60,456 nt of DNA from Octopus bimaculoides (lineage: Eukaryota), in contig NC_068981.1 of assembly GCF_001194135.2 (NCBI RefSeq), positions 9,754,600 through 9,815,055 of the forward strand. The letters run 5' to 3'. Position numbers and translations under genes: made by a program. The notes under the pieces are model-generated. The model worked only from the letters and a program-made list of their open reading frames with translations. It was not told the origin of the DNA and made no database searches. Of the stretch, positions 13,355-49,140 are shown piece by piece. The number at the start of each line of letters is the position of its first letter. Within the stretch, counting starts at the first letter, position 1.

Positions 13355-13584
13355 ATATTAGTACTAACACACTCACGCACAAATTGTATATTTAATGTTG
13401 TATTGGGAATACTCTCTATTACTGCCAGAATTTGTTGAATGACTATCGCAGATCGTATGACTAAATTCTAATGTATAAGCATTAGATTCGTAGCAAACGT
13501 AAAATGCGTGGGCAATCAAAGAAAAGTGAAAAGAAGAAAAAAGATCTCAAGTATTATATGCTTAGAAAATTGTTTATGTAAATA

Positions 13585-13725
13585 TGGTAAGAAGCTTTAC
13601 TTCCCAATCACATGGTTTCAAGTTCAGTCCTACGGCTTGGCACCTTCGGCGAATATCTTCGACTATATCCTCGGGCCTTGTGAGTTTGTTGGACGGAAAC
13701 TGAAAGAAGCACGTCGTATATATAT
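13585..13725 (+). mobile_element. SINE family A, 5' part
   Basis: ggtaagaagc...gttcagtcc...ggcaccttcggc...gacggaaactgaaagaagcacgtcgtata. Confidence 0.8.
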
Positions 13726-13787
13726 ATAATAGAATATAATAATATATAATAGAGTATCTAGCTATATCTGTATGCATGTATAATCTT

Positions 13788-15200: not shown

Positions 15201-15435
15201 CAAGGCGGCGAGCTGGCAGAAATGTTAGGATGCCGGGCGAAATGCTTAGCGGTATTTCGTCTGTTTTTACGTTCTGAGTTTTAATTCCGCCGAGGTCGAC
15301 TTTGCCTTTTATCCTTTCGGGGTCGATAAATTAAGTACGAGTTATGCACTGGGGTCGATGTAATCGACTTAATCCCTTTGTCTATCCTTGTTTGTCCCAT
15401 CTATGCTTAGCCCCCTGTGGGGGAATAAAGAAGTA
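15201..15435 (+). mobile_element. SINE family B (tRNA-like head; central motif resembling the Deu/Nin domain), full length
   Basis: AAGGCGGCGAGCTGGCAG head and ctttgccttttatcctttcggggtcgataaattaagtac core; 15-bp TSD AATATTTCTATATTC at 15186-15200 and 15436-15450. Confidence 0.9.
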
Positions 15436-16599
15436 AATATTTCTATATTCAAATGTACAAATATAAACGTATATAATTATATACAATAAATTAATTAAAT
15501 ATATTAATATACTCCTGCATGTATGTAAATGCAGAAGTCTATTTTTCTCTAGCTTCTGCCATTTTCCTAGCTATGTCTAATTATTCACATTTGCAGGTAG
15601 AATAATACAGTCACTTGGCACAGAACTACCCTGAATCGTTTATTTGTGGTTAATAGGAAGAAATGTGAAAAATATCTTGTGTCTTTAATTTAAGAGGTTA
15701 AGAAAAAAATATTCTGAGATCAGCATAATAGCGTGGACAGCCATTAATGGAAACCGGATTTTGATTTTAGTACTGTTCTGTCGTGGAAGATAATCACTAT
15801 GGATTTGTGTCTATTACAATTTAAACTTTAAAATATCAAGAAGATTCTTCGTTATTATCATTTACTTTCTTTGCGAAGTTCAGCCATAATTGTATTAGAT
15901 CGCCATTTGTTGTGAGTTATGTGGTTTCTGTAGGAAATAGATGTATAAAGAACTCCGAAAAGCTGATTTCCAGCATCTCATTCGAAGACATAGACTATAA
16001 TTAAAGCTAAGTTGATGCCATTTTTTATGACCCTCAAATGCTGAGAAAATAGCGTCGATATGAAAATTAGAAAATTTTAGTCTCATATTTCATCATTCCT
16101 TAAATGCATACTGTGTAAAGTAGCTCTAACATTATTCAAGCACTGAAGAGTTACAGAAAGCTTTTTCTTCTCTCGATTGAAATTGAACCTACAGCTACTT
16201 CATTATCAGAAATATAGCAACAGTTAACATTTTCACTGTGTATTCAGTCTTCAGTATCATCCAGAAATCAGCATTTTAACCACTTCAAATCGCGTCCATT
16301 CCTTAGTTGGAGGATTGTGACCACCTACAGCATGTGTCTTAACTATATAATGATGTCCTGTTTACTTAGATGAACACATCATCAACGTATGTAAGTTTTC
16401 AACATAGGATTAGTACTTTTCTAGACCAGAGTTCTCAGACATTCGAATGCGATTTAAAATGAGAAAAAACATGGCATCGGACGGAAGGGTGATGCATACC
16501 CTGCGCACACACAAGGATAAAATAAAAATTAATTTGATAAATATATTTTCAGACGAATTCATATTTCAACAAAATGACATCAAGAGTTATTTCCCCTGC

Positions 16600-18145: not shown

Positions 18146-18653
18146 CAGTAGACCATCGTGAGAGTTACGTTCCAAAATATCTCGCGATTGGTGAAGATCT
18201 ACAAAGTAGATACAGGACTTTATCGTATATATTTTTATAATTTGTACATATTTATTTTATTATAAATGCAAAACAATACCACATACTCGCCTCCCGAGTT
18301 TCGTTTTCCATCCAGTATGTGCGATTCTTTATTTACTCATCTATGGTACGCTACGTATTTTCTTGTAATATATTTTAATTAATGTGTTATACAGTGTAGT
18401 ACTGTACTGCATTTTTATTTATTAATTTATCAGTTTTTAAGCGTGAAAATGCTTATTTTACCACAGAAATAATTAAAATCTAAGATAATATAAATACACA
18501 TCAGCTGCAGAAACCTGCGATATACCGAGGAGTCCGGGATATAAGTTTACATTTGTTAGCCAGAAAAATCGTCGATGTGCTGAGTGCGCGATAGGTGAAC
18601 CGCGATGTACTCAGTACGCGATAGATGAATCGCGATATGGCGAGGGGTTACTG
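18146..18653. mobile_element. pogo/Tigger-like MITE
   Basis: TA|CAGTAGACC... left end and ...GCGATATGGCGAGGGGTTACTG|TA right end; ~30-bp internal tandem duplication at about 18573-18632. Confidence 0.6.
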
Positions 18654-18771
18654 TATTTAGATTAGCTGTTTTCCTAATGAGGTTAACTGTAAATTGTATC
18701 TGATAAGACCTGCTTTAAATATTAGATAAATAAAAAGTAAATATTTACGAAATCATGAAATGCTTGTCTTT

Positions 18772-18815
18772 TACTGATTAAATTTTTTCTTTTTCTTTTG
18801 TCTTTTCAGGTGAGT
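18772..18815 (+). promoter_or_regulatory. Strong 3' splice site directly abutting a consensus 5' splice site (candidate recursive splice site)
   Basis: Branch-like TACTGAT (A18777), pyrimidine tract 18783-18807, AG 18808-18809, GTGAGT 18810-18815. Confidence 0.55.
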
Positions 18816-19255
18816 TATATTTTCTATCAGTTATGGACCAGAAGAATGCCTTTTAGTGCAGTGTGCAAAATATAAAACCAAGTATTGCGCCTAAGTATAT
18901 ACTGTGATTTCTAAATTAATTTGAAACATATGTGTCTTAAAAAACAAATAGTTGTTGATATTTTGATCATTGAAAAAAGAGACGTTGATCATAAATTTAC
19001 TATTGTATTTAAATAATAATGTATTTATGATTACAATTTCTTATTGTCTGACTGTATATTATTGAAAATGCTTTATATTCTCTGAATCTATGAACTGCCT
19101 ATACATTATTAGAACATAAAATATTTCAAAAGAATTGTTTGTTATGAACTAGAACCATTTTAATTAGTCATATTTAACACGTATATTAACGATCTTTATG
19201 ATAACTTCACACGGCTATCAGAACGATTACAAATCCTTTCAGAAAGCAAAATAAT

Positions 19256-19262
<7 letters not shown>

Positions 19263-19310: not shown

Positions 19311-19404
19311 CCCCAAAACATTTTGTGGTAAATCCGTCAAAGATTATACATACCAAATTAACTCAAATAATGTAAATATAATTATGTAAACATATACAAA
19401 TCAT

Positions 19405-19556
19405 TTTTTACATTATTTACATTTGACGGATATTTGTCCTCATCTTGTTTGTTGTTAACACAAACGTTTCGGCTGATATACTCTCCAAATATCCGTCAAA
19501 TGTAAATAATGTAAAAAATGTACATAATTCCTCATCTCTTAAATATAGAACTGTAC
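19405..19556. mobile_element. Truncated copy of the 7.6-7.9 kb element's tail, with inverted duplication
   Basis: Near-identical to 7654-7720 and 7883-7928. Perfect inverted repeat 19402-19436/19486-19520; 12-bp direct repeat TATACAAATCAT at 19393-19404 and 19557-19568. Confidence 0.8.
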
Positions 19557-21029
19557 TATACAAATCATACTATAAAAGTTTATTTGGTAAGTTCGTTCAT
19601 TTTTGAATAGTTAGTAAAAATTACTAGTCTCTATATACACCTGTTAATTAATATCGTTAAGAAGTACTGATATATACTGCTATAAACATCTGGTTGTATT
19701 AAGCACCATAAAATTGATTTTATAATTCAAATATTCAGTGTAAAAACTTCATTACCAGAGAAGTCCAGTTAATTCATTGAAATCAATTTCTTTATTTTCA
19801 ATAACATTCTTTTGATAACACTTTACGTGAGCCGAATCCAAAGGCCGGTTTCACTTCTCTATCAAAGTAGTAACACTTCAATAATTATGAAAGTTATATT
19901 CTTTCATTCTATAGTAGCTATAGTGTAAATATTAAATAAAGGTTCAGTTTTTAGTTGATTTTTTTCTCTACCAAACTATCTATTTTTCTTCTTATTGAAT
20001 TCATTGAGGGTAAGACTGAAAAGATTGTGTGAATGGAGATGCAATGGAAAGGTACCTCTTTTGTCTGTGATATGAAGATATAAACATTTTACAATTATCT
20101 GAAAATATATTCATATACCCAAATGTATTTCATGTATTTCATGTATTTCCAATATATTACATTTCTAAATATATCAGTTTATTTCACAAAATCTTTGAAG
20201 TTTTATTTAGAGATGTTCCTGATAATTGTACAAAATCAAGGTGAACTGATATGGTTGGAATTCTGCAGAAACAGTTTGTTTTCCAAGAGACTAAGCAATG
20301 ACAATAGATAAAGTATTTATTAAAATCACTATTTATTTATTCATAGATATTTTATGCAGTATAGCTTAGCAATTAGTTATTCGGTTTGAATAGGTTTTAC
20401 AGTTACAACTGTCTGCATTGTTGAGTTTATATTGTTCAATTGCTTCTATTCTCGTTATGTCTCTTCATTTTTATAAGTTCTCAGGGGAATAAGGAGAATG
20501 TTCATGAATTTTGCTGTTCATTCAAGGTTGGTTTGATTAACACAACACATACCCTGCCTGAACAACTTTAGCTCTTTAACTTCAGAAAAGCGCAGTATGT
20601 CTGATAACACAGGAACCATTTTCATAATGGAATTCGGGTTTCGACTTTTAACCATCATCTTCTGTAGTGTTATGACAATTTATAAGAAGAAATAATTCAA
20701 TCAACATAACTTCCATCTGAAATGTATTTGCCAGTAACAGAAAGACGAAATGCTAATGGGATAGTTAAAAAGAAAATTGGATTAAAAATTTTTAGGAAAC
20801 AAATATTAAAATACCGGTGGCATAAGTGTATCAATGTATGTGCTGCGTTTTGAGACGGTGATATTACATATGATCACCATGGTTAGCAACTGAATAATTA
20901 TGCACGAATGCTGTTTTAGAACAAACTGTCCGATGTATACTTTCATTGAATAGGATAGTTTCACTTCTGACTGATATCAAACAATTCTCCTCCAGATTTG
21001 TACATAGGCACATAAGTGGGTAAGTGATT

Positions 21030-21289: not shown

Positions 21290-23190
21290 GTGAAATTCTT
21301 GGTGGTGCCCATCTAGCTGAAGACAAATATGGTTCTTTCCTCACGGTGGAGAGAGCTACCAATAGAAAATAGTCAGACTATTGCAAAGAACTATGTTTCA
21401 TCGTAAACTCAGTCATCACACGAATATCCAACAAAATGCCGTCAATAACATCATAAAAATGAGGAATTTTGTAATATTCCAGTTGGAATTCGAAGGTGCA
21501 GTTCATGCCGAAAGGAAGAAAATCGCCGAAAGTGGCCAATTTTTCAGGAGCGTTGTTGAAACACGAGCAGCGAGAAATTCATGAAGTTATTGATATCCCT
21601 GAGAGAGAGGATGAAGGAAAGAAAAATAGTGGTCGGAAGAATTAACCCAATTTTTGAGGATAACACTTCCCTAGAAAAGCAACTTAGAAGTTTGTCAGAA
21701 GTACTATCAATTTCATCAATGATTCCAGTAAAATGTTGAGACGAAAAGGAATGCCTCAGAATAGATATTTAACGTCATAGTACTGATTAAGAAACATTTA
21801 CAGCGTCCATGAGAAATCTATCACAGTTTCACTGACTTTAAAATAGTATTTGATCGTATTTGGCATGATAGTTTAAAGCAATGCGATGAGGGATTTTTGA
21901 CTTTCAGGACAACGCCATCTATCTGATTCAAACACTGAACAAAGATTCAAATGGCAGTAACAATCTCGGAGATTTCTTCAGAAAAACAGTCAAAATCTAC
22001 TCAGAATGAGACGATTTGTCGTGGTTGTTTGGCGCTAAGGAATTGACACGTTTCATTGGACATTCATCCTGATTTGGTGGCTGTAGTTTTGGTACTGGAA
22101 GCAAATACACACACATACACACACATCGCACATACAAGCGCACGCAGACATATGCATATTATACATAAAGAGGATGAAAGAAAGAGATATTGCATGTACA
22201 TACAAACATAACTCATACATATAAAGAAAGAGAGACCGACAGAGGACGAAAGAACAAGGGAAACATCAAAATGTCTAATGTCAAACCAGCGGCGCCAAAT
22301 AGGTCGCGAGGAAACGGTAGTGCATAAACATCTCATACCTGAGTTTGTTTCGGCTGTCATTTATCCCCTCTACTTGCAACATCTTTCAAGAAACTATTAT
22401 ACAAATAATACAATGTGACTTTCACATTTCCATTTCCAGCAAATAACGGACCACTTGCAAACTGCCTTTTAATGACAACATCGACCTTATGAGAGGCAGC
22501 AAAGCAGAAATCCAGGAATTCTTTAGACGTAAGCAATGGTGGTCATTTCAGAAATTAGCAACCTTTTCTTGATAGCCAACGTGATGATGAAAGAACAAGC
22601 GTACTATGAAGTGGATAACTGGAATTGCCACGGATCTAATTTGAGCGAGAACGGCAACTCAATAAGTGAGATAAAAGCAGAACTAGATCTGGCCCCATCT
22701 TTATGACGAAGAGGAATGTCATATGGAAAAACAGCTCCATCAGTGTTCCTCTGAAGTGAAATCGTTCGAGTTCTTAGTGATTTTGATCTTTCTGTACGGG
22801 CGCGAAAGTGGGATACTTATAATCGCCACTGAAGGGTTTATGCATTCAAGCACAGCTATTTTGTATCTTGTGCACTGAACACAAGACAAAATCTTTATCC
22901 CGAATCAAATCACTAAATATTCTGGCACGCCGGGACCATTTATGGCTACAGTGAAACACCGAGAGCGCTCTTGGTAATGGCATGAATGCCGCGACGACTC
23001 TCTCTCCGAGATCATTTTCCAGGGCTCAGTTAACTGAGATCGAAGAACAGAAAGGGTAATAAATTCTGGGGCTGACTGCACGGAAGACTAGACAGTTAAG
23101 TATCGAGAACTTTTTGAGTATGACGAATAACAGCGACCAGAAACAATTGCCGTTTGTTAAGATGTTAAACGTAGCATCTCAACGACTATA
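21290..23190 (+). mobile_element. Degenerate RTE-clade LINE (RT region to 3' end), interrupted at about 22001-22350
   Basis: IFNVIVLIKKHLQ..EIYHSFTDFKIVFDRIWHD (about 21770-21870), GCHLSP (22352), FNDNIDLMRGS (FADD-like) and LYG.ESW-like motifs; many stops. Confidence 0.75.
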
Positions 23191-24194: not shown

Positions 24195-24447
24195 AAGGCG
24201 GCGAGCTGGCAGAGAGGTAAAGCAGTGAGCTGGCAGAATCGTTAGCACGCCGGGCAAAATGCTTAGCGGGATTTCGTCTGCCGTTACGTTCTGAGTTCAA
24301 ATTCCGCCGAGGTCGACTTTGCCTATCATCCTTTCGCGGTAGATAAATTAAGTACCAGTTGCGCACTGGGGTCGATATAATCGACTTAGTCCCTTTGTCT
24401 GTCCTTGTTTGTCCTCTCTATGTTTAGCCTCTTGAGGGCAATAAAAA
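24195..24447 (+). mobile_element. SINE family B, full length, with duplicated head motif
   Basis: High similarity to 15201-15435; GAGCTGGCAGA occurs twice at the 5' end. Confidence 0.9.
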
Positions 24448-26344
24448 TTACATACAAGTGCTTAAAATGCACAAAAAAAATTATGTATTAATACTATATT
24501 GTAGTTCGTTTAGGATGTTATGTTTGATAAACCTACGAAAGAGGGCTCTATGCGGTCGCTTGACGTCTCAGAAAACGACAGCCAAATATTCCTTAAATCA
24601 CAAACTTTTATCTTTAGAAATATGTATCACGTATTTTTAAATATCGCTGAAAGCACAGGATTATCCCAGATGAGAAATGTTTGCTTGTTAGTCTACTTGA
24701 TCAGCGAGGGCTGGAAACGGAGATTAGACAGTAAGTCATGAGGATCTGTCCATGGATTTGCTTGAAATAGCTACCAAGTCTCTAAAATCAGTTGGCAACG
24801 TCTTAAAAGGAGAAGGATTAATCAGATTATGTAGTTTTAGATATTCCTAAATAGTTGGGACGGACACATCTGGAAAGAACTGCAATAAATTGTGGCTGTA
24901 TTAATCAAATATTTGGAAACAAACAAACTTTGAGAAAGATTATTACAAAGATAAGTCAATACTCGACTAATATATGTCTGTCTTTTGTTTTTACATTTTC
25001 TTTATAAAGTTTATCAAAGCATCATCAAAAACCCCTGCAAAAAGATTTCCCCTGAGATCGTCAGGCAGCATAAAATAAGAGAAATCATCCTTCCTCATAC
25101 TTGCATTGTTATCTTAAATCTGAAACCATATGTAGCATCTCACTCATCGATTATCCCGTCACTTATGGTTCATGGACATAATTCTCTTTTCACTTACAAA
25201 GAAATAACTTAAATGAATTAGTTCGTAGTGAGAACGTAGTTTTCGTTTTCAAGCTGATAAGGCAACACCTGTTCGTAATGATTACACTATTTCTACACAA
25301 ATACACATAAATAAACGGTGCAATACACAAATTAACACAAACAGATAAGGAAACGATATAACGTAATATCTAGCTAGCATCAGTATTAATAAAACAAAAA
25401 TTATATTAATTGATAGTTCGCAATATACAATAAAAAAAAGATGGAAAACAATTATTCTTTTTCTTTTAACAATTCTTTTACGCGTATACTGTTAATAGCT
25501 AAAACAAGCAAAAAGCTCTATTAAAAAGAAAAGAATAAGATAGTCGGCCGGTGAATATACATAGATCTTTACCGAATAATGAAAGAACTATTTAAAACAG
25601 GTCGGACAAGAAAGCAGTTCAAAGGAAAACAACAACTGCTTCAATGAAATGAGGTTAGCAACAAAGTAATATAGATGTAAGAAAGATTACAGTTAAAAGG
25701 AAGAGAGAAAAACAGAAGACTACTCTGCAATACTAATTGCAAATGTTTGGGATACTAAAAGATCAATACTTATATAATTAATTCTTACATAAGTATGAAG
25801 CTGGTAATAATAGGAAGGTGCGGCTATCATACATTTTCACAATGGCTAAAGAAAAACTAATACTTGCTACTTATTATGATAGCTTTATACAGAGAAATGA
25901 GTAGAGCGCTGCGTAAAATGTCATACTGCATTTAGTTAAATCCTTTTAGGTCTTGTATTCAAATATCACTAAGACCAGCTTTGAATTTCATCCTTATAGG
26001 TTCGATAGCATCTGACAACCTCTTGGGCCGATATGATAAAAAAATATTCATCGCGAAATTTTTTTTTAGTCCGGCGGGTCAAAATACTGAAAATTGTATT
26101 TGTATATACATGGATATTCTCTATCTAAATGCTTATAGGTAAACTTACTATTTTTCTAATATATGTAATAAAATATATGAAATTTGAACATAAGCATGTA
26201 AAACTAATAACATGACCTTCATTAAAAAGAAGTTACATCATATTTCATAAAATTTCGTTACTAGGTTCCAGAAAACAGTTTATGGGAAGGAAAAAGCGTT
26301 GCATGCAATGCGATACAATTCCTAACCAAATACCTTTGGTTTAA

Positions 26345-26530
26345 ATTTTGGCACTAGGCCAACAATTTCCGGGGAGAAGGTAAATCAAATACGGGGCTCT
26401 CAGTGCTCAGCTGGTATTTACTTTATCGACGCTGAAAGGATGAAAGGCAAAGTTGACTACATAGACGATAAAGTCGGAAGAGATGCTGCATAGCATCTTT
26501 TCCGGCGCGGTAACAATCCTGCCAGCTTCT
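26345..26530 (-). mobile_element. SINE family B, degenerate
   Basis: ctggtatttactttatcgacgctgaaaggatgaaaggcaaagttgac is the reverse complement of the family B core. Confidence 0.65.
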
Positions 26531-29789: not shown

Positions 29790-29939
29790 TATAAGCGTAA
29801 GTTTGCCTTCCAACTACATGATTCTGGATTGAGTCCCACTTCATGGCACCTTGGGCAACTGTCTTCTTCTATAGCATCCAGACCGACAATTCCTTGAGAG
29901 TGAATTTGGCTGACGGAAATTAAAAGAACCCGGCTTGAA

Positions 29940-29975
<36 letters not shown>
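29790..29975 (+). mobile_element. SINE family A, 5' part
   Basis: gagtcccacttcatggcaccttgggcaactgtcttc...gacggaaattaaaagaaccc followed by (GT)n. Confidence 0.8.
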
Positions 29976-29976
<1 letters not shown>

Positions 29977-30399
29977 TTTGTTTTTGTCTTTCTCCTCCAT
30001 AACCGCTTCTCAAGTGCAGCTGTATATATCTACGTAAATATAAAATACAAAAACGTACTTGAAATGTTGACATATGTTGGTTAAATGCGTGATTTGTATC
30101 CGGGTTCTGTGAATAGTCATAGCCCTAAGGTCGATAGCATTAAAAGCATATTTTTATTGATACCAGCGATGCCTCAAGTATCGCAGATCAGTATTGCATC
30201 ACCTGAAAATGCAGAATTTATTCTCAACAAGATGAAAAAATGAAAAAAGAAGAAAATATACAAACATAAGGTCTTGGTAACATGAAATAATGAAAAAATT
30301 AGAACTTGGATAAGTTAAGCCAAATACTTGATAATACTAAGTATACAAGATATTAAGTTTTTAAAGAGACAACAGATAACAGTTTATCATGTGAACATA

Positions 30400-34544: not shown

Positions 34545-34710
34545 AGATTTTGACACAAGGCCAGTGTTCAACTGGTACTTATGTTATCAACCTCGAGAAG
34601 ATGAAAGCCAGAGCTCACCTCTGTAGAATTTGAACTCAGGACGTTAAGACGGACGAAATGCCGCGAGGCACTTTTCTGCTGTGCTACCGATTCTGCCAAC
34701 TCGCACACTT
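34545..34710 (-). mobile_element. SINE family B, degenerate
   Basis: gaatttgaactcaggacgttaagacggacgaaatgcc...gattctgccaactcgc. Confidence 0.7.
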
Positions 34711-36143: not shown

Positions 36144-36145
<2 letters not shown>

Positions 36146-36520
36146 GCGCGGGCGTGGCAGAGTGGTAAGAAGCTTACTTCCCAACAACATGATCCCGGGT
36201 GCAGTCCCACTACGTGTCACTTGCGCCAGTGTCTTCTCTATAGACTCGGGGCGACCAAAACTTGAGTGCATTCAGTAAAGAGAAATTGAGAGAAGCTCGT
36301 CGTATATATAGATGTATATATTTATTTATGTGTGTGTGTTTGTCACCCCGCCATCGCCTCACAACTGATGTTAGTGTCTTTGCGTCCTCGAAACTCTGGG
36401 TAATCGTTGATAGAATAAGTACTTGGTTTAGGAAGATTAAGTCCTGCGGTCGAATTCTTCGATTAAAGGCGGTGGTCCAACATGACCGCAGTCAAATGAA
36501 TGAAAGAAATAAAAGAATAG
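36144..36520 (+). mobile_element. SINE family A, full length, diverged
   Basis: Head ggcgtggcagagtggtaagaagc through tail ggcggtggtccaacatgaccgcagtcaaatgaatgaaag. Confidence 0.85.
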
Positions 36521-36922
36521 AAGAATATAAAGAAGTATTATTACCGTTATCAATAGTATTAATAAGGTAATAATAAGCTAGCTACGAAGTTCACACCGTT
36601 ATAGGCACAAAATAAGGTAAATTTAGATTCACTAAAAATGCTGACGAAGATGAAGGTAAAATAGAAATGGTAAACTAAAGTTAGAGCCAATGCTCCAAAC
36701 ACCACTATGAACTCACGATAAAGATACACACAAGCAATGCAATGAACATATGAGAAATGGGTTTACCTTTGCGTTGAATACATCAGTAAGTAATGCATAT
36801 TTCAATATCAATTGATTTCACGCTTTGAATGACAAACATACTCTGCGATCTTCAGTTGAAAATAAAATTTTAACATCTATTTCTAACATATTCACTACAT
36901 TAGCTCGTGTGCTGTGCCTTCC

Positions 36923-36955
<33 letters not shown>

Positions 36956-37676
36956 NNNNNNNNNNNNNNNNNNNNNNNNNNNNNNNNNNNNNNNNNNNNN
37001 NNNNNNNNNNNNNNNNNNNNNNNNNNNNNNNNNNNNNNNNNNNNNNNNNNNNNNNNNNNNNNNNNNNNNNNNNNNNNNNNNNNNNNNNNNNNNNNNNNNN
37101 NNNNNNNNNNNNNNNNNNNNNNNNNNNNNNNNNNNNNNNNNNNNNNNNNNNNNNNNNNNNNNNNNNNNNNNNNNNNNNNNNNNNNNNNNNNNNNNNNNNN
37201 NNNNNNNNNNNNNNNNNNNNNNNNNNNNNNNNNNNNNNNNNNNNNNNNNNNNNNNNNNNNNNNNNNNNNNNNNNNNNNNNNNNNNNNNNNNNNNNNNNNN
37301 NNNNNNNNNNNNNNNNNNNNNNNNNNNNNNNNNNNNNNNNNNNNNNNNNNNNNNNNNNNNNNNNNNNNNNNNNNNNNNNNNNNNNNNNNNNNNNNNNNNN
37401 NNNNNNNNNNNNNNNNNNNNNNNNNNNNNNNNNNNNNNNNNNNNNNNNNNNNNNNNNNNNNNNNNNNNNNNNNNNNNNNNNNNNNNNNNNNNNNNNNNNN
37501 NNNNNNNNNNNNNNNNNNNNNNNNNNNNNNNNNNNNNNNNNNNNNNNNNNNNNNNNNNNNNNNNNNNNNNNNNNNNNNNNNNNNNNNNNNNNNNNNNNNN
37601 NNNNNNNNNNNNNNNNNNNNNNNNNNNNNNNNNNNNNNNNNNNNNNTATATATATATATACATACGCACACCTATA

Positions 37677-37835
37677 GGCGTGGCTATGTGGTAAGTTTTC
37701 TTCTCAACCACACAGTTCCGGGTTCAGTCCCACTGCATGGCATCTTGGCCAAGTTTCTTCTGTTATAGCCTCGGGGTGACCAAAGCCTTGTGAGTGGATT
37801 TGATAGAAGAAAACTGAAAGAATCCTGTCGTATAT
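37677..37835 (+). mobile_element. SINE family A, 5' part
   Basis: ggcgtggctatgtggtaag...gggttcagtcccactgcatggc...caaagccttgtgagtggatttg. Confidence 0.85.
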
Positions 37836-37959
37836 AGTAGTAGACATTTGTTGGTCTCGAGAGGCCATAGATCTACGCCCAAATAAATCGTGTCAGCTGC
37901 TGCTGATGTTGTAGTGTCTGTTCTGTTGATACATTTAACAGTTTTTGAGAGGTAGACCG

Positions 37960-40730: not shown

Positions 40731-41136
40731 TTACTCTTTTACTCTTTTACAGGTTTCAGCCATTTGACTATGGCCATGCTGGAGCACCGCCTTTAGTCGA
40801 GCAAATCGACCCCAGGACTTATTCTTTGTAAGCCTAGTACTTATTCTATCGGTGTCTTTTGCCGAACCGCTACGTTATGGGGACGTAAACACACCTGCAT
40901 CGGTTGTCAAGTGATGTTGGGGGGGACAAACACAGACACACAAGCGTATACACACACACATACATACATATATATATATAACGGGCTTCTTTCAGTTTCC
41001 GTCTACCAAATCCACTCATAAGGCTTTGGTCGGCCCGAGGCTATAGTAGAAGACAGTTGCCCAAGGTGCCACGCAGTGGGACTGAACCCAGAACCATGTG
41101 GTTGGTAAGCAAGCTACTTACCACACAGCCACTCCT
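40731..41136 (-). mobile_element. SINE family A, full-length young copy
   Basis: Reverse complement runs GGAGTGGCTGTGTGGTAAGTAGC...GGGTTCAGTCCCAC...GGCACCTTGGGCAA...GGTGCTCCAGCATGGCC...(GAGTAAAA)n; very similar to 53533-53900. Confidence 0.95.
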
Positions 41137-41997
41137 ACTCCTTATCTAACTTTTTTAGAAAAATAAGTTGTGTTCATGATTTGTTCGACTGAACGCTTCA
41201 ACATCGTGCCCCAGCATGGTCACAGTCAAATGACTGAAACAACTAAGAAAAAAAAAAGAGATAAATATTATTCTGTCTGGAGTATTAAAAAACCCACGAC
41301 TTGATAATCCGATTGATACCGCATAAGCTGAACGTGATGTATTTATCAAAGTTCATTCTAACGATATTGTTCAAATTCTCATTCACTTGCAGTTTTGCGG
41401 GGAAGTGCACGCACTTGCATTGATTGCAGAAGGATGAAAGACAAAGTCGAGCCTATAAGCATTTGCACTCAGAACATAAAGGCAAACATCAAAATAACGA
41501 AAAAATATTTTGTCTCTCAATCTATCGGTCCACCTCTCTCTATTCCAACGATATTATTGAAATATATATCCAAGCATTAGTTTGAAGACGGGTACTCCAA
41601 AATATCCAGTGATATTTGTAGATTATTCTATAGCTACCTGAAGTTTAGTAAAAATAGTGAATTATGAGCAAAATAACTTGAATATTTCAAATCTTGTTTG
41701 TTTAAAATATTTTCAGAGCAGATATATAATTTCTGATTTTTTTTTCTTCAGTTTTTTTTTGTTTGTTTGTTTCATGTCATTTTGATATTTCCAGCGAAGG
41801 ATAATTTGAGTATTGTGACGATGGGAACTTTTCTAATGGCATTACAAAATGTCACACAGATGTTGAAGCGATTCCTCTGGGGAATTATAACACAACGAGC
41901 ATTACTATCCTATTTTCATTAGAAATAATCTAAGTACTACTTAGCAATGACATTATTCTTTAATGGATATAACCACGTGTGTATGTACGTATGTATC

Positions 41998-42075: not shown

Positions 42076-43085
42076 CAGACACGACAGCAGTAAATAGACA
42101 CACTTATAATCATTAAAATTTATTTAAATCTGAAATTATACATTCAAATTAATTGTTATAATGTGAATATTTAATATTTAGTAGACATGCCCTTTATATT
42201 TTTCAATGCAAGGACTCTATTAGGCATGTTACTAATTAGATGACGAATATCCTGTTGTGGAATTTCTAGTCAAGTGACTGACTTGGCCATGGAAGCTGTT
42301 TAATGCCATTCTCATCCAACAAATCTTCAGTCATTTTAGCCGTGTGACAAGGAGCCCTGTCTTCCATAAATAAAGAGTCATCTTTAATCATTTCACCGCT
42401 GGAGAAGATTGGAAGGAGTCCTTTCTGTAATATGGACACATATTTATTTGAGTTTGTTTCCCTCACACTCCACTTGCTCTGATCAACCATTGCTCCAAAT
42501 TGCTCTCCAGATCAACACAGAATAGCTGCCGTGTTTCATTGTTGGCTGCAATTTTTAAACATCAAATTCTTGATCACAGTGTCTCCAGACCCACACGCGA
42601 CCACTGTCAGAAAATACAGCAAATCTGGACTCATTGAAGAATATGACAGTGTGCCAAAATGCTAGTGACCTCTCCACCACCTTGCTGGCCCAATCTTTTC
42701 TCCGCTTGAAATTAACTGGTCGAAGATATGGCTTCTTTCTTGCTGCTCTGCATAGTAACCAAATTTGTGGAGATACTTAATAGCAGTTCTGGGACTGACA
42801 TCTACTTGTTCTGCTATGTGAGAGGCCTTGCAGCGAAGATTATCTTCCACATTTTCCTTAGCAAAGAGAAAGGTCCTGTCAGAGAGCCCTAGTTGATCTG
42901 GATGAGGTGATGTGGACTCCTTCCCCTCCCTGGTGAATTGCACAATCACTCTATTAACTGTAGAAAGCGGGATCCCAACGTTTTCTGCGATTTTACGCTG
43001 ACTATGTCCACCTTTAGAATGACGCACAATACGGCCTCTTTGAGATTCAGACAGTTCCAAGGCTTCTTTTGTACCTGATTAAACA
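42076..43085 (-). mobile_element. Tc1-like DNA transposon, one TIR retained, other end lost
   Basis: TA|CAGACACGACAGCAGTAAATAGACAC (42076-42101) resembles a Tc1 TIR; transposase motifs follow on the minus strand. Confidence 0.85.
42171..43060 (-). pseudogene. Tc1 transposase pseudogene
   Basis: [11 protein letters not shown]...[20 protein letters not shown] (HTH), WHTVIFFNESRF..FSDSGRVWVWR, LQPTMKHG, FMEDRAPCH, WPSQSLD, LISNMPNRVLAL..YKGMSTKY*; stops, frameshifts and an internal deletion. Confidence 0.88.
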
Positions 43086-43086
43086 G

Positions 43087-43660
43087 TCACATATAAAACC
43101 TAAGTGAAGGCTCGGAATTCACATTCCAGCAAGGACAAAAATTCTCAATCAAAACTAACTTCACATGTGCCTCCCACAACCTTATCTATGTCCTAACCTG
43201 CTCAAGTTGTGGCCATAATTATGTAGGCCAAACGAGCCCTTCTTTGAGACGCAGAGTCACGTTGCATAAGGAACAGTTTCACTTCCCCCAGTACAGGCAA
43301 ATTGCACTGAGCGGACATATTGACAGATGCGCAGGGGATAAAACGCCGAATTTCCTTATCTTCCCCCTGTACCAATGCAAAGATTCAATTTCAGTGCAAG
43401 AACGACTAAATAAAGAGAACTTATTCATTCAAAAATATAAACCACACCTCAATATTCAAATCTGACAACCTTAAAAACTATCCTAAGGAATTAGTTATCC
43501 CCCTTGACACCCATTACCTCCCTTGGTTCACTCTCTAAACCCTTTCTTATTTTTCAAACAGCCAAGATGGCGAAACTCCTTCATCATGCGAATTAATCAC
43601 TATACAATGCCCCTTGAAAAGCTAATTTGAATAGCGAAAACCGGTTGGATTTTACAAGAC
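43087..43660 (+). mobile_element. Penelope-like element 3' fragment (GIY-YIG endonuclease plus 3' region)
   Basis: FTCASHNLIYVLTCSSCGHNYVGQTSPSLRRRVTLHKEQ...H...RLNKENLFIQKYKPHLN* (to 43465); degenerate hammerhead-like fold at 43609-43648. Confidence 0.85.
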
Positions 43661-43917: not shown

Positions 43918-43958
<41 letters not shown>

Positions 43959-43999
43959 ATGTATGTATGTATGTATGTATGTATCTATGTACACACACA

Positions 44000-44410
44000 C
44001 ACACAGACATACTTTCCAGCACCGCCAGCATTGCCCAAACGACTTTAACATTAGATTCAGAATTCGCCTAAGGCTCGGGTCACTTGCCATACGTCTCCAA
44101 CATAATTCAGGATCACAGCCTACAAATTCACTGCAAAACAATTTCTTTTCATCAACAAGCTTTGCTCTATTTAACATTGTCCTAAAACAAATCAAAGCAA
44201 AAAATCCCATCACCTTCAAACGAAACCTGAACAAGTTTCTTCAAGAGATATCAGATAAGCCAGCTATACCAGGATACACCTCAGTCAACAAAAACTCCCT
44301 ACTTGAATGGGCCATGATACCATAAAACTTGACATATAAATAATTTAGCAGATCTTACCAGGTGGTGCTATAAAGTAAGATATGACCTGGGCCATTCTGG
44401 CCGAAACATA
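44000..44410 (+). mobile_element. CR1/L2-type LINE 3' end
   Basis: NNFFSSTSFALFNIVLKQIK...TFKRNLNKFLQEISDKPAIPGYTSVNKNSLLEW*, followed by a short stem-loop GGCCattctGGCCGAAAC. Confidence 0.75.
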
Positions 44411-48544: not shown

Positions 48545-49140
48545 GCATATGTCCAAATGTGGGCGTACGACTACTGCTCCAAACCATGGTCACCACAACA
48601 TATTAAATTGACGCCGGAACTCGAAGCTACACACAGAAAATCTTCTCGATGCAACGTATCAGCTTCTGGGAAAGTCAGAAAGAACTAAAACTCTTCTGAG
48701 AACGAAGTCTGGTAGGCTTTGCAACGAAATAGATCTGGAAAATCTTGGAAGGACTTGTAACAAACTATGGCATTGAAAGTTATACAAACAGCAGAACGGG
48801 GCGCCACTGCACAATGCCAAATATTCCAGCATCTCCATCAAAATACAGGACTAGATACTGCAATAGCTTGGGTTTCAAGGAACCACAGCTCTTCAGTATC
48901 CTTCCAAAATACATGAAAGGTGTGGATGTGGGTGCCTTTAAAACACAACTGGACTTTCCCCTGTCAAGGGTTCCCGATGAGGGCAGGAAATACATGGCAA
49001 GAAATACAATCAGGGCAGCGGCATCAAACTCCCTCGTTCACCAAATGCCATATATCAGAGGAAGTTTCAAATAATGGTGTAACACAGTCAACGATGGTGC
49101 CCCAGCATGACCGCAGCTTTGAAGCTGAACAATTTAGAGA
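48545..49140 (+). mobile_element. CR1-type LINE 3' fragment
   Basis: DYCSKPWSP..IKL..ELEA, then EGLVTNYGIESYTNSRTGRHC...FKEPQLFSILPK...DVGAFKTQLD..LSRVPDE...SNSLVHQ*; 3' UTR with GGTGCCCCAGCATGACCGCAG. Confidence 0.85.

What the first reader, a model, noticed from the sequence alone, without database searches (positions are those of the whole stretch)
18772..18815. Near-perfect recursive-splicing (ratchet) motif: long pyrimidine tract then CAG|GTGAGT
Seen: branch-like TACTGAT 32 nt upstream of the junction, a 25-nt U/C tract, AG, then immediately a consensus donor GTGAGT. It sits in apparently unique sequence, in 60 kb with no recognisable host exon. Established: AG|GTRAGT junctions mark zero-length recursive exons in very long Drosophila and vertebrate introns. 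Inference: the window lies in a giant plus-strand intron removed stepwise. I am not aware of this being characterised in cephalopods. Alternative: an ordinary acceptor for a short or terminal exon (one frame reads VSYIFYQLWTRRMPFSAVCKI*).
Basis: partly seen in the sequence, partly recalled or inferred. Interest (0 to 1): 0.7.

Follow-up and report, generated by a model that had tools for sequence, protein, structure and literature searches.

The report
Candidate recursive splice site, unverified
A textbook back-to-back splice acceptor/donor signal really is present in repeat-rich non-coding DNA of a probable cephalopod genome, but nothing I could reach shows that this strand is transcribed or the site used, so it is a motif-only candidate.

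Summary
The motif is at the stated coordinates. It has a branch-like TACTGAT (A at 18777, 32 nt from the junction), a 25-nt tract that is 24/25 pyrimidine, then CAG|GTGAGT at 18809|18810. It is the best composite acceptor|donor site of 325 AGGT sites in the window, scoring 22.9 of 28.3 bits against 15.8 for the runner-up. None of 300 simulated windows reached it. About 0.002-0.003 such sites are expected by chance per window, which scales to roughly 100-250 per multi-gigabase genome.

Every other defining feature of a ratchet point is untested or unsupported:
- No host exon, gene or strand could be established.
- The two strands show no compositional or signal asymmetry.
- No usable donor lies 30-150 nt downstream to define the cryptic recursive exon.
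- No orthologous sequence or RNA data could be reached.

The "ordinary coding exon" alternative is disfavoured. All frames close within 44-82 nt, and no protein among 5.8 billion contains the downstream peptides.

My estimates are about 0.5 for an unselected, unused coincidence, about 0.3 for a recursive site that is really used, and about 0.12 for the acceptor of a non-coding or cryptic exon. Cephalopod origin is plausible but unproven. Interest is modest until RNA data exist.

The parts
18772..18778 (+). Branch-point-like TACTGAT. The core CTGAT matches yUnAy, with the candidate branch A at 18777.
   Evidence: the A is 32 nt upstream of the last base of the acceptor, and no AG lies between it and 18808.
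18783..18807 (+). Polypyrimidine tract of 25 nt, 24 pyrimidines and one G at 18800.
   Evidence: it is one of 26 tracts with at least 22/24 pyrimidines in the window (10 on +, 16 on -).
18807..18809 (+). CAG acceptor trinucleotide. The putative junction lies after 18809.
   Evidence: the acceptor half scores 13.8 bits, and only 4 of about 6,000 AG sites on both strands score as well.
18810..18815 (+). GTGAGT consensus donor immediately after the acceptor.
   Evidence: CAG|GTGAGT takes the maximum of the 9-nt donor matrix (13.3 bits).
18810..18904 (+). Sequence that would form the cryptic recursive exon if there is one. All three frames stop within 44-82 nt. Only weak donors are present: GCA|GTGTGC at 18861, CAA|GTATTG at 18882 and ACT|GTGATT at 18904.
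   Evidence: the donor scores are 3.3, 1.3 and 2.4 bits, while 10% of all GT in the window score at least 4 bits.

Best explanation
The most likely reading is an unselected coincidence. One of the window's 26 T-rich pyrimidine tracts happens to end in CAG and to be followed by GTGAGT, in AT-rich, transposon- and microsatellite-rich non-coding DNA.

The sequence is splice-competent on paper. If the + strand were part of a pre-mRNA, U2AF and U2 would bind the tract and branch point. An upstream exon would then be joined to 18810, and the regenerated GTGAGT would serve as the next donor. Nothing shows that this happens.

Shown: the motif, its rarity within one window, and the absence of detectable coding sequence around it. 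Inferred: that it is not under selection and not used.
For: A composite site this good is expected about 0.002-0.003 times per 58 kb. That is roughly 40 per Gb, or about 100-250 in a 2.7-5 Gb genome, so motif-only sites of this quality must exist without any function.

In human, 10.57 million intronic AGGT sites yield 1.67 million that pass a splice-site predictor. Only 3,022 of those have RNA support (bioRxiv 10.64898/2026.09.10.750672).

The two strands do not differ in base skew, donor-like hexamers or poly(A) signals. No second strong site lies on the + strand in 60 kb; the next best scores 15.8 bits, within the simulated range. No convincing donor lies 30-150 nt downstream to define a recursive exon. 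No exon, gene or homologue was found anywhere near the site.
Against: For a single window the motif is a roughly 1-in-400 event. Every element sits in the right place and at the right spacing: branch point at 32 nt, an AG-free zone, a T-rich tract, C at -3, and a full consensus donor.

On a Pai-style normalised scale it scores 0.92. Fly recursive sites generally score above 0.85 (PMC6110457). In Drosophila, motifs of this strength in long introns are mostly genuine. The exon-free 60 kb is what a giant intron would look like.
Confidence: 0.5

Rival explanations
1. It is a genuine recursive splice site (ratchet point) in a very long + strand intron. The upstream exon is first spliced to 18810, which removes the upstream part of the intron as a lariat branched at about A18777. 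The regenerated donor GTGAGT is then used to remove the downstream part, and nothing from this site remains in the mRNA.
For: The composite site scores 22.9 of 28.3 bits. It is the only one of 325 AGGT sites with a normalised score of at least 0.8, and no simulated window matches it. The branch point and the AG-exclusion zone are correct. No exon was detected in 60 kb. Flies have more than 500 such sites, with strong and conserved motifs (PMC8605326, PMC6110457).
Against: There is no evidence that the + strand is transcribed or that a host gene exists. Strand asymmetry is absent. The downstream donor needed for exon definition is weak, at 3.3 bits or less. No further strong sites lie on + in 60 kb, although fly long introns often carry several. 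Conservation is untested. In vertebrates only a small minority of good AGGT motifs are used. Recursive splicing has not been described in any cephalopod in the searched literature.
Confidence: 0.3
2. It is an ordinary 3' splice site of a non-coding, UTR, alternative or cryptic 'poison' exon that merely begins with GTGAGT. The acceptor is used, and the exon runs on to a weak downstream donor or to a distant poly(A) site.
For: The acceptor half alone is among the 4 best of about 6,000 AG sites in the window. Weak donors lie at +51, +72 and +94. Premature stops in all frames fit a non-coding or poison exon.
Against: No protein among 5.8 billion contains any of the six-frame peptides of 18383-19148, including VSYIFYQLWTRRMPFSAVCKI, at E<=0.1. 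No Pfam domain was found in any ORF between 13 and 25.5 kb. There is no AATAAA or ATTAAA until 19931, 1.1 kb downstream. An exon that starts by chance with a full consensus donor is itself about a 1-in-1,000 event. A donor that strong would out-compete the weak downstream ones, which turns this reading back into recursive splicing.
Confidence: 0.12
3. It is an ordinary 5' splice site, and the T-rich stretch is the 3' end of an exon that ends ...TTTTCAG|GTGAGT.
For: The donor is a perfect consensus. The frame that ends at 18809 is open back to 18759.
Against: The would-be exon is a 25-nt pyrimidine tract preceded by stops. No acceptor scoring at least 12 bits lies in the few hundred nt upstream. 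No protein match was found.
Confidence: 0.03
4. The pyrimidine tract is the complement of the A-rich 3' tail of an old minus-strand retroposon (GAAAAGACAAAAGAAAAAGAAAAAA). It lies beside CAGGTGAGT by accident. This is a specific origin for the coincidence reading.
For: The window holds many SINE/LINE remnants and 26 such tracts. The tail-like composition can be seen directly in the sequence.
Against: No target-site duplication was found, and the presumed body at 18816-19260 has no second copy in the window. No repeat library was available to test it.
Confidence: 0.05

Closest known systems
Drosophila intronic ratchet points (Ubx, kuzbanian, Beadex; more than 500 sites)
   Same: A strong polypyrimidine tract plus CAG is juxtaposed directly with a consensus donor around AG|GT. 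The branch point is suitably placed, and the downstream sequence is out of frame and full of stops. The normalised motif score is 0.92, against a typical value above 0.85 (PMC6110457, PMC8605326).
   Different: Fly sites are defined by RNA intermediates, by lying in sense-strand introns longer than about 10-20 kb, by ultraconservation, and by a cryptic exon of about 50 nt with its own donor. None of the first three could be tested here, and the fourth is weak. The donor is GTGAGT rather than the GTAAGT that I recall (from memory) as prevailing in flies.
Vertebrate recursive sites and RS-exons in long neuronal genes (Sibley et al. 2015 and later catalogues)
   Same: An AGGT core lies behind a pyrimidine tract, deep in exon-free sequence. 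The phylogenetic distance from flies is comparable, so the same spliceosomal logic would apply.
   Different: Vertebrate sites work through an exon-defined RS-exon with a real downstream donor, which is not evident here. Only about 9 fully suppressed sites were called definitively (PMC8605326), and 3,022 of 1.67 million predictor-passing AGGT sites have RNA support. In that regime the motif alone predicts poorly.
Unused splice-like AGGT sites in non-coding DNA
   Same: The motif occurs at about the frequency composition predicts for a whole genome. It sits in unique AT-rich DNA between transposon remnants, with no sign of transcription, conservation or partner sites.
   Different: It lies at the extreme top of the score distribution, 7 bits above anything else in 60 kb and above all 300 simulated windows.

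Membership tests
Drosophila-type intronic ratchet point (zero-nucleotide recursive exon) | Strong 3' splice site (pyrimidine tract, YAG) directly abutting a strong 5' splice site (GTRAGT) at AG|GT | tested here: met
   24/25 pyrimidines, CAG|GTGAGT, 22.9 of 28.3 bits, normalised score 0.92, the best of 325 AGGT sites.
Drosophila-type intronic ratchet point (zero-nucleotide recursive exon) | Usable branch point 18-40 nt upstream, with no intervening AG | tested here: met
   CTGAT (yUnAy) with its A at 18777, 32 nt upstream. There is no other AG within 60 nt upstream.
Drosophila-type intronic ratchet point (zero-nucleotide recursive exon) | Lies inside a very long intron, on the sense strand of an expressed gene | not testable with these tools
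   No annotation or RNA data were available. No exon was found on either strand. No strand asymmetry was seen. Exact look-ups of window ORFs found no record.
Drosophila-type intronic ratchet point (zero-nucleotide recursive exon) | Short cryptic RS-exon (about 50 nt) closed by a downstream donor | tested here: inconclusive
   donors at +51, +72 and +94 score 3.3, 1.3 and 2.4 bits of 13.3. None is in the top 10% of GT sites in the window. Stops in all frames fit a skipped exon.
Drosophila-type intronic ratchet point (zero-nucleotide recursive exon) | Strong conservation of the SA|SD block in related species | not testable with these tools
   No cephalopod genome could be searched as DNA. The junction 22-mer is absent from metagenome contigs. 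No ORF near the site gave a handle on orthologous contigs.
Drosophila-type intronic ratchet point (zero-nucleotide recursive exon) | RNA intermediates: exon-to-site junction reads, saw-tooth intronic coverage, lariats | not testable with these tools
Vertebrate-type recursive site with RS-exon | RS-exon defined by a competent downstream 5' splice site | tested here: inconclusive
   only weak donors lie within 150 nt. The first donor of at least 5 bits is 518 nt downstream, at 19328.
Ordinary acceptor of a coding exon (internal or terminal) | An open reading frame continues from the acceptor and matches a known or predicted protein | tested here: not met
   the frames close after 44-82 nt; no hit at E<=0.1 among 5.8 billion proteins for any frame of 18383-19148; no Pfam domain.
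Ordinary acceptor of a terminal exon | Polyadenylation signal within a plausible distance downstream | tested here: inconclusive
   the first AATAAA or ATTAAA on + after the site is at 19931, 1.1 kb away. This is possible for a long 3' UTR, but nothing else supports it.
A-rich tail of a minus-strand retroposon | Target-site duplication and a repeated element body adjoining the tail | tested here: not met
   no flanking direct repeat, and 18816-19260 has no second copy in the window. No repeat library was available, so old or low-copy elements are not excluded.

The most novel reading that the evidence does not exclude
This is a fly-style, zero-length recursive splice site operating in a giant intron of a cephalopod. 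That would be the first such site outside arthropods and vertebrates, and it would imply that stepwise removal of very long introns at strong AG|GTRAGT sites is ancestral to bilaterians or evolved again in large-genomed molluscs.
Probability: 0.3. Interest if true: 0.55.

Novelty: not a real feature. Interest (0 to 1): 0.3.

Why it matters
If the site were used, it would extend recursive splicing to lophotrochozoans. The searched literature holds no paper linking recursive splicing to octopus, and the only paper containing both 'recursive splicing' and 'cephalopod' is a fly-mammal microexon study. It would also give a concrete locus for asking how cephalopods, with their very long neuronal genes, process giant introns.

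As it stands it is one motif hit. A single hit cannot separate a selected site from the 100 or more equally good coincidences that a genome of this size should contain. Its practical value is as one entry in a list to be checked against total-RNA data.

Tried and rejected
1. Host exon hunt.
- Pfam scan of all stop-to-stop ORFs of at least 72 aa in the window: only mariner, RT, Tc1 HTH and GIY-YIG transposon domains.
- Pfam scan of all ORFs of 35-71 aa between 13 and 25.5 kb: nothing.
- A crude acceptor+donor+composition exon finder: only transposon pieces ranked high.

2. Protein searches.
- Transposon composite: best named hit Argonauta hians at 64%, and no protein flagged as encoded by the window.
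- Six-frame peptides of 18383-19148 plus 14 exon candidates: 0 hits.
- Mariner: best hits are unnamed Logan contigs at 87% and 75%. Their run accessions could not be tied to an organism.

3. The most protein-like nearby ORF, on the minus strand at 21381-21578: 0 hits in a full HMMER search of 1.84 billion representatives. My guess that it was hAT-like is unsupported.

5. Exact look-ups of four window ORFs, tried in order to fetch annotated or orthologous contigs: none on record.

6. Metagenome scans. The junction 22-mer gave 0 hits. The CpG-rich 20-mer upstream gave 4 hits, all chance matches in GC-rich bacterial contigs.

7. Rfam and tRNA scans found nothing at or near the site.

8. The retroposon-tail origin of the tract: no target-site duplication and no second copy.

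9. Strand-asymmetry tests (base skew, GTRAGT, poly(A) signals, composite AGGT sites scoring at least 10 bits: 11 on + against 5 on -): none significant.

10. The first simulation script was killed for running too long and was rerun in a faster form.

The phage, plasmid, E. coli, viral and prokaryotic collections were not searched, because they are irrelevant to a metazoan intron.

Full report
**What is there.** TACTGAT lies at 18772-18778. A 25-nt tract, TTTTTTCTTTTTCTTTTGTCTTTTC, runs from 18783 to 18807 and has one G at 18800. CAG ends at 18809, and GTGAGT occupies 18810-18815. The core CTGAT fits the metazoan branch consensus yUnAy, with its A 32 nt from the junction. No other AG occurs in the 60 nt upstream, so the AG-exclusion zone is intact. 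Within its genomic context, CAG|GTGAGT takes the maximum possible score of a 9-nt donor matrix. The other two frames also stop, so all three close 44-82 nt after the junction.

**Is it more than chance?**
- The octamer AGGTRAGT is not unusual. It occurs 2 times on + and 1 time on -, and composition predicts about 1.7 per strand.
- What is unusual is its position directly behind a pyrimidine tract. 23 of the 24 upstream bases are pyrimidines, which is true of 7e-4 of all 24-mers in the window.
- With an approximate acceptor+donor weight matrix (written from memory, so the absolute values are rough) the site scores 22.9 of a possible 28.3 bits. The next best of 325 AGGT sites on both strands scores 15.8.
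- In 300 windows simulated from order-1 and order-4 Markov models of this sequence the maximum was 20.6. Sites within 5 bits of the observed score occurred 0.05-0.09 times per window.
- Treating the halves as independent gives 4 acceptors as good as this one, times a GTRAGT frequency of 5.2e-4, or about 0.002 expected per window. Counting the window's 26 pyrimidine tracts gives the same figure.
- On a normalised scale built like that of Pai et al. the site scores 0.92, and it is the only AGGT in the window above 0.8. Fly recursive sites generally score above 0.85 (PMC6110457).

Scaled up, 0.0025 per 58 kb is about 40 per Gb. That means roughly 100-250 equally good sites are expected from composition alone in a 2.7-5 Gb genome.

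**Surroundings.** The window is AT-rich, with about 33% G+C and 28% in the 2 kb around the site. It has 12 runs of N and dozens of microsatellites. It carries these transposon remnants:
- a frameshifted mariner at 11127-12219 on +;
- a reverse-transcriptase fragment at 4437-5692 on +;
- a Tc1-like element at 42269-43078 on -;
- a Penelope-like GIY-YIG piece at 43097-43462 on +;
- two LINE ORF2 tails;
- two SINE-like families.

The 1 kb around the motif has no second copy in the window. I found no host exon anywhere:
- Pfam on every ORF of at least 72 aa gave only transposon domains.
- Pfam on every ORF of 35-71 aa between 13 and 25.5 kb gave nothing.
- A simple exon finder ranked only transposon pieces.
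- The most protein-like neighbouring ORF, on the minus strand at 21381-21578, has no relative among 1.84 billion representative proteins.

It fits a giant intron, intergenic DNA or a minus-strand gene equally well.

**Gene, strand and organism.** I could not establish any of them.
- No protein in the 5.8-billion-protein collection is flagged as encoded by the window.
- Exact look-ups of four window ORFs found nothing.
- The best named transposon hit is from the octopod Argonauta hians at 64%. The closest mariner, at 87%, is an unnamed contig from run SRR20902413. I could not trace that run, or the assembly GCA_024449705.1 that holds the best reverse-transcriptase hit, to an organism.
- A cephalopod origin is therefore plausible but not shown.
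- Signals that might betray the transcribed strand are flat. A and T, and G and C, are balanced. GTRAGT occurs 29 times on + against 31 on -. AATAAA plus ATTAAA occurs 138 times on + against 112 on -. Composite AGGT sites of at least 10 bits number 11 on + against 5 on -, which is not significant.

**Tests of the recursive-site reading.** According to Joseph and Lai (PMC8605326), fly ratchet points are juxtaposed acceptor|donor pairs in long introns. They are ultraconserved, and they depend on a short cryptic exon of about 50 nt closed by its own donor, which the ratchet-point donor out-competes. Results here:
- The first feature, the juxtaposed pair, is met.
- The stops in all frames fit a cryptic exon that is always skipped.
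- The downstream donor is unconvincing. The candidates at +51, +72 and +94 score 3.3, 1.3 and 2.4 of 13.3 bits. One GT in ten anywhere in the window scores at least 4 bits.
- No other strong composite site lies on the + strand in 60 kb.
- Location in a sense intron, conservation and RNA intermediates could not be tested. The junction 22-mer is absent from metagenome contigs, and no ORF near the site gave access to orthologous contigs.

**Tests of the alternatives.**
- A coding exon starting at 18810 is disfavoured. The frames close quickly. None of the six-frame peptides of 18383-19148 matches any predicted protein at E<=0.1. The first poly(A) signal is 1.1 kb away.
- A non-coding, UTR or poison exon cannot be excluded. 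However, a consensus donor at its first base would out-compete the weak downstream donors, which would make it behave as a recursive site anyway.
- An exon ending at 18809 is unlikely. It would consist of a pyrimidine tract with no good acceptor upstream.
- The tract could be the complement of a retroposon's A-rich tail. I found no target-site duplication and no second copy, and no repeat library was available.

**How predictive is the motif alone?** In flies it predicts well: there are more than 500 sites, with strong and conserved motifs (PMC8605326, PMC6110457). In human it predicts poorly. Of 10.57 million intronic AGGT sites, 1.67 million pass a splice-site predictor and 3,022 have RNA support (bioRxiv 10.64898/2026.09.10.750672). 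Only about nine fully suppressed sites were called definitively (PMC8605326). In lungfish, giant introns did not bring more recursive splicing at fixed sites (bioRxiv 10.1101/2024.12.11.627982). Which regime applies to cephalopods is unknown. No paper in the searched library links recursive splicing with octopus, and the only paper containing both 'recursive splicing' and 'cephalopod' is a fly-mammal microexon study.

**Weighing.**
- I set about 100-250 chance sites per genome against an unknown number of selected sites, from tens to hundreds.
- I allowed that only about a fifth of chance sites would lie in sense-strand introns.
- I discounted for the weak downstream donor and for the lack of any corroborating signal.

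This gives about 0.5 for an unselected, unused coincidence, about 0.3 for a site that is really used recursively, and about 0.12 for the acceptor of a non-coding or cryptic exon. The remainder goes to an ordinary donor and other readings. These are judgements, not computed posteriors.

**Verdict.** The interpretation can neither be supported nor refuted with what is available. The finding is a reasonable candidate for a list to be checked against total-RNA data and annotation, not a discovery. If it were confirmed, it would be a new member of a known kind, a recursive splice site in a new phylum. Interest is 0.3.

Noticed in passing
window 3829-4204 and 4215-4590: Two 376-nt copies that are 100% identical lie on either side of a 10-N gap. 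This is most likely an assembly or gap-closing artefact rather than a real tandem duplication.
   Followed up: partly
window 19393-19568 (second copy about 7644-7928): A MITE-like element with perfect 35-nt inverted arms (19402-19436 and 19486-19520), flanked by the 12-nt direct repeat TATACAAATCAT. A related copy, 92% identical over 79 nt, lies at 7644-7721.
   Followed up: partly
window 18518-18660: A CpG-rich patch sits in otherwise AT-rich DNA, 170 nt upstream of the motif. It includes a 30-nt unit, CGATGTACTCAGTACGCGATAGATGAACCG, repeated 2.1 times at 18573-18636. Its origin is unknown. The metagenome matches to its core 20-mer were chance hits in bacterial contigs.
   Followed up: partly
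window 488-606, 13582-13728, 29800-29988, 36144-36527, 37675-37837, 40732-41142, 53528-53902; and 15202-15439, 24219-24454, 26324-26455, 34561-34704, 57382-57544, 59504-59694: Two interspersed SINE-like repeat families, with 7 and 6 copies at 70-87% identity in both orientations. No tRNA-like head was detected by ARAGORN.
   Followed up: partly
window 11127-12219 (+), 4437-5692 (+), 42269-43078 (-), 43097-43462 (+), 43918-44322 (+), 48733-49071 (+): Degraded transposon coding remnants: a frameshifted mariner (HTH_48 and Transposase_1), a reverse-transcriptase fragment interrupted by an N gap, a Tc1-like transposase, a GIY-YIG (Penelope-like) endonuclease piece, and two LINE ORF2 C-terminal tails.
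   Followed up: partly
window 21381-21578 (-), with a strong acceptor-like site at 21599 (-): A 66-aa ORF with protein-like composition lies just downstream of a 14.4-bit acceptor-like site on the minus strand, though the two are not in the same frame. It has no homologue among 1.84 billion representative proteins and no Pfam domain, so it is probably not an exon.
   Followed up: yes
window 9995-10033 (-): A near-miss of the same kind: a 27-nt pyrimidine tract followed directly by GTGAGA with no AG. It shows that partial versions of the motif arise by chance in this sequence.
   Followed up: no
window 50490-50756 and 51164-51420: A direct repeat of about 267 nt at 89% identity, 670 nt apart, in one of the most G+C-rich parts of the window. 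It was not characterised.
   Followed up: no
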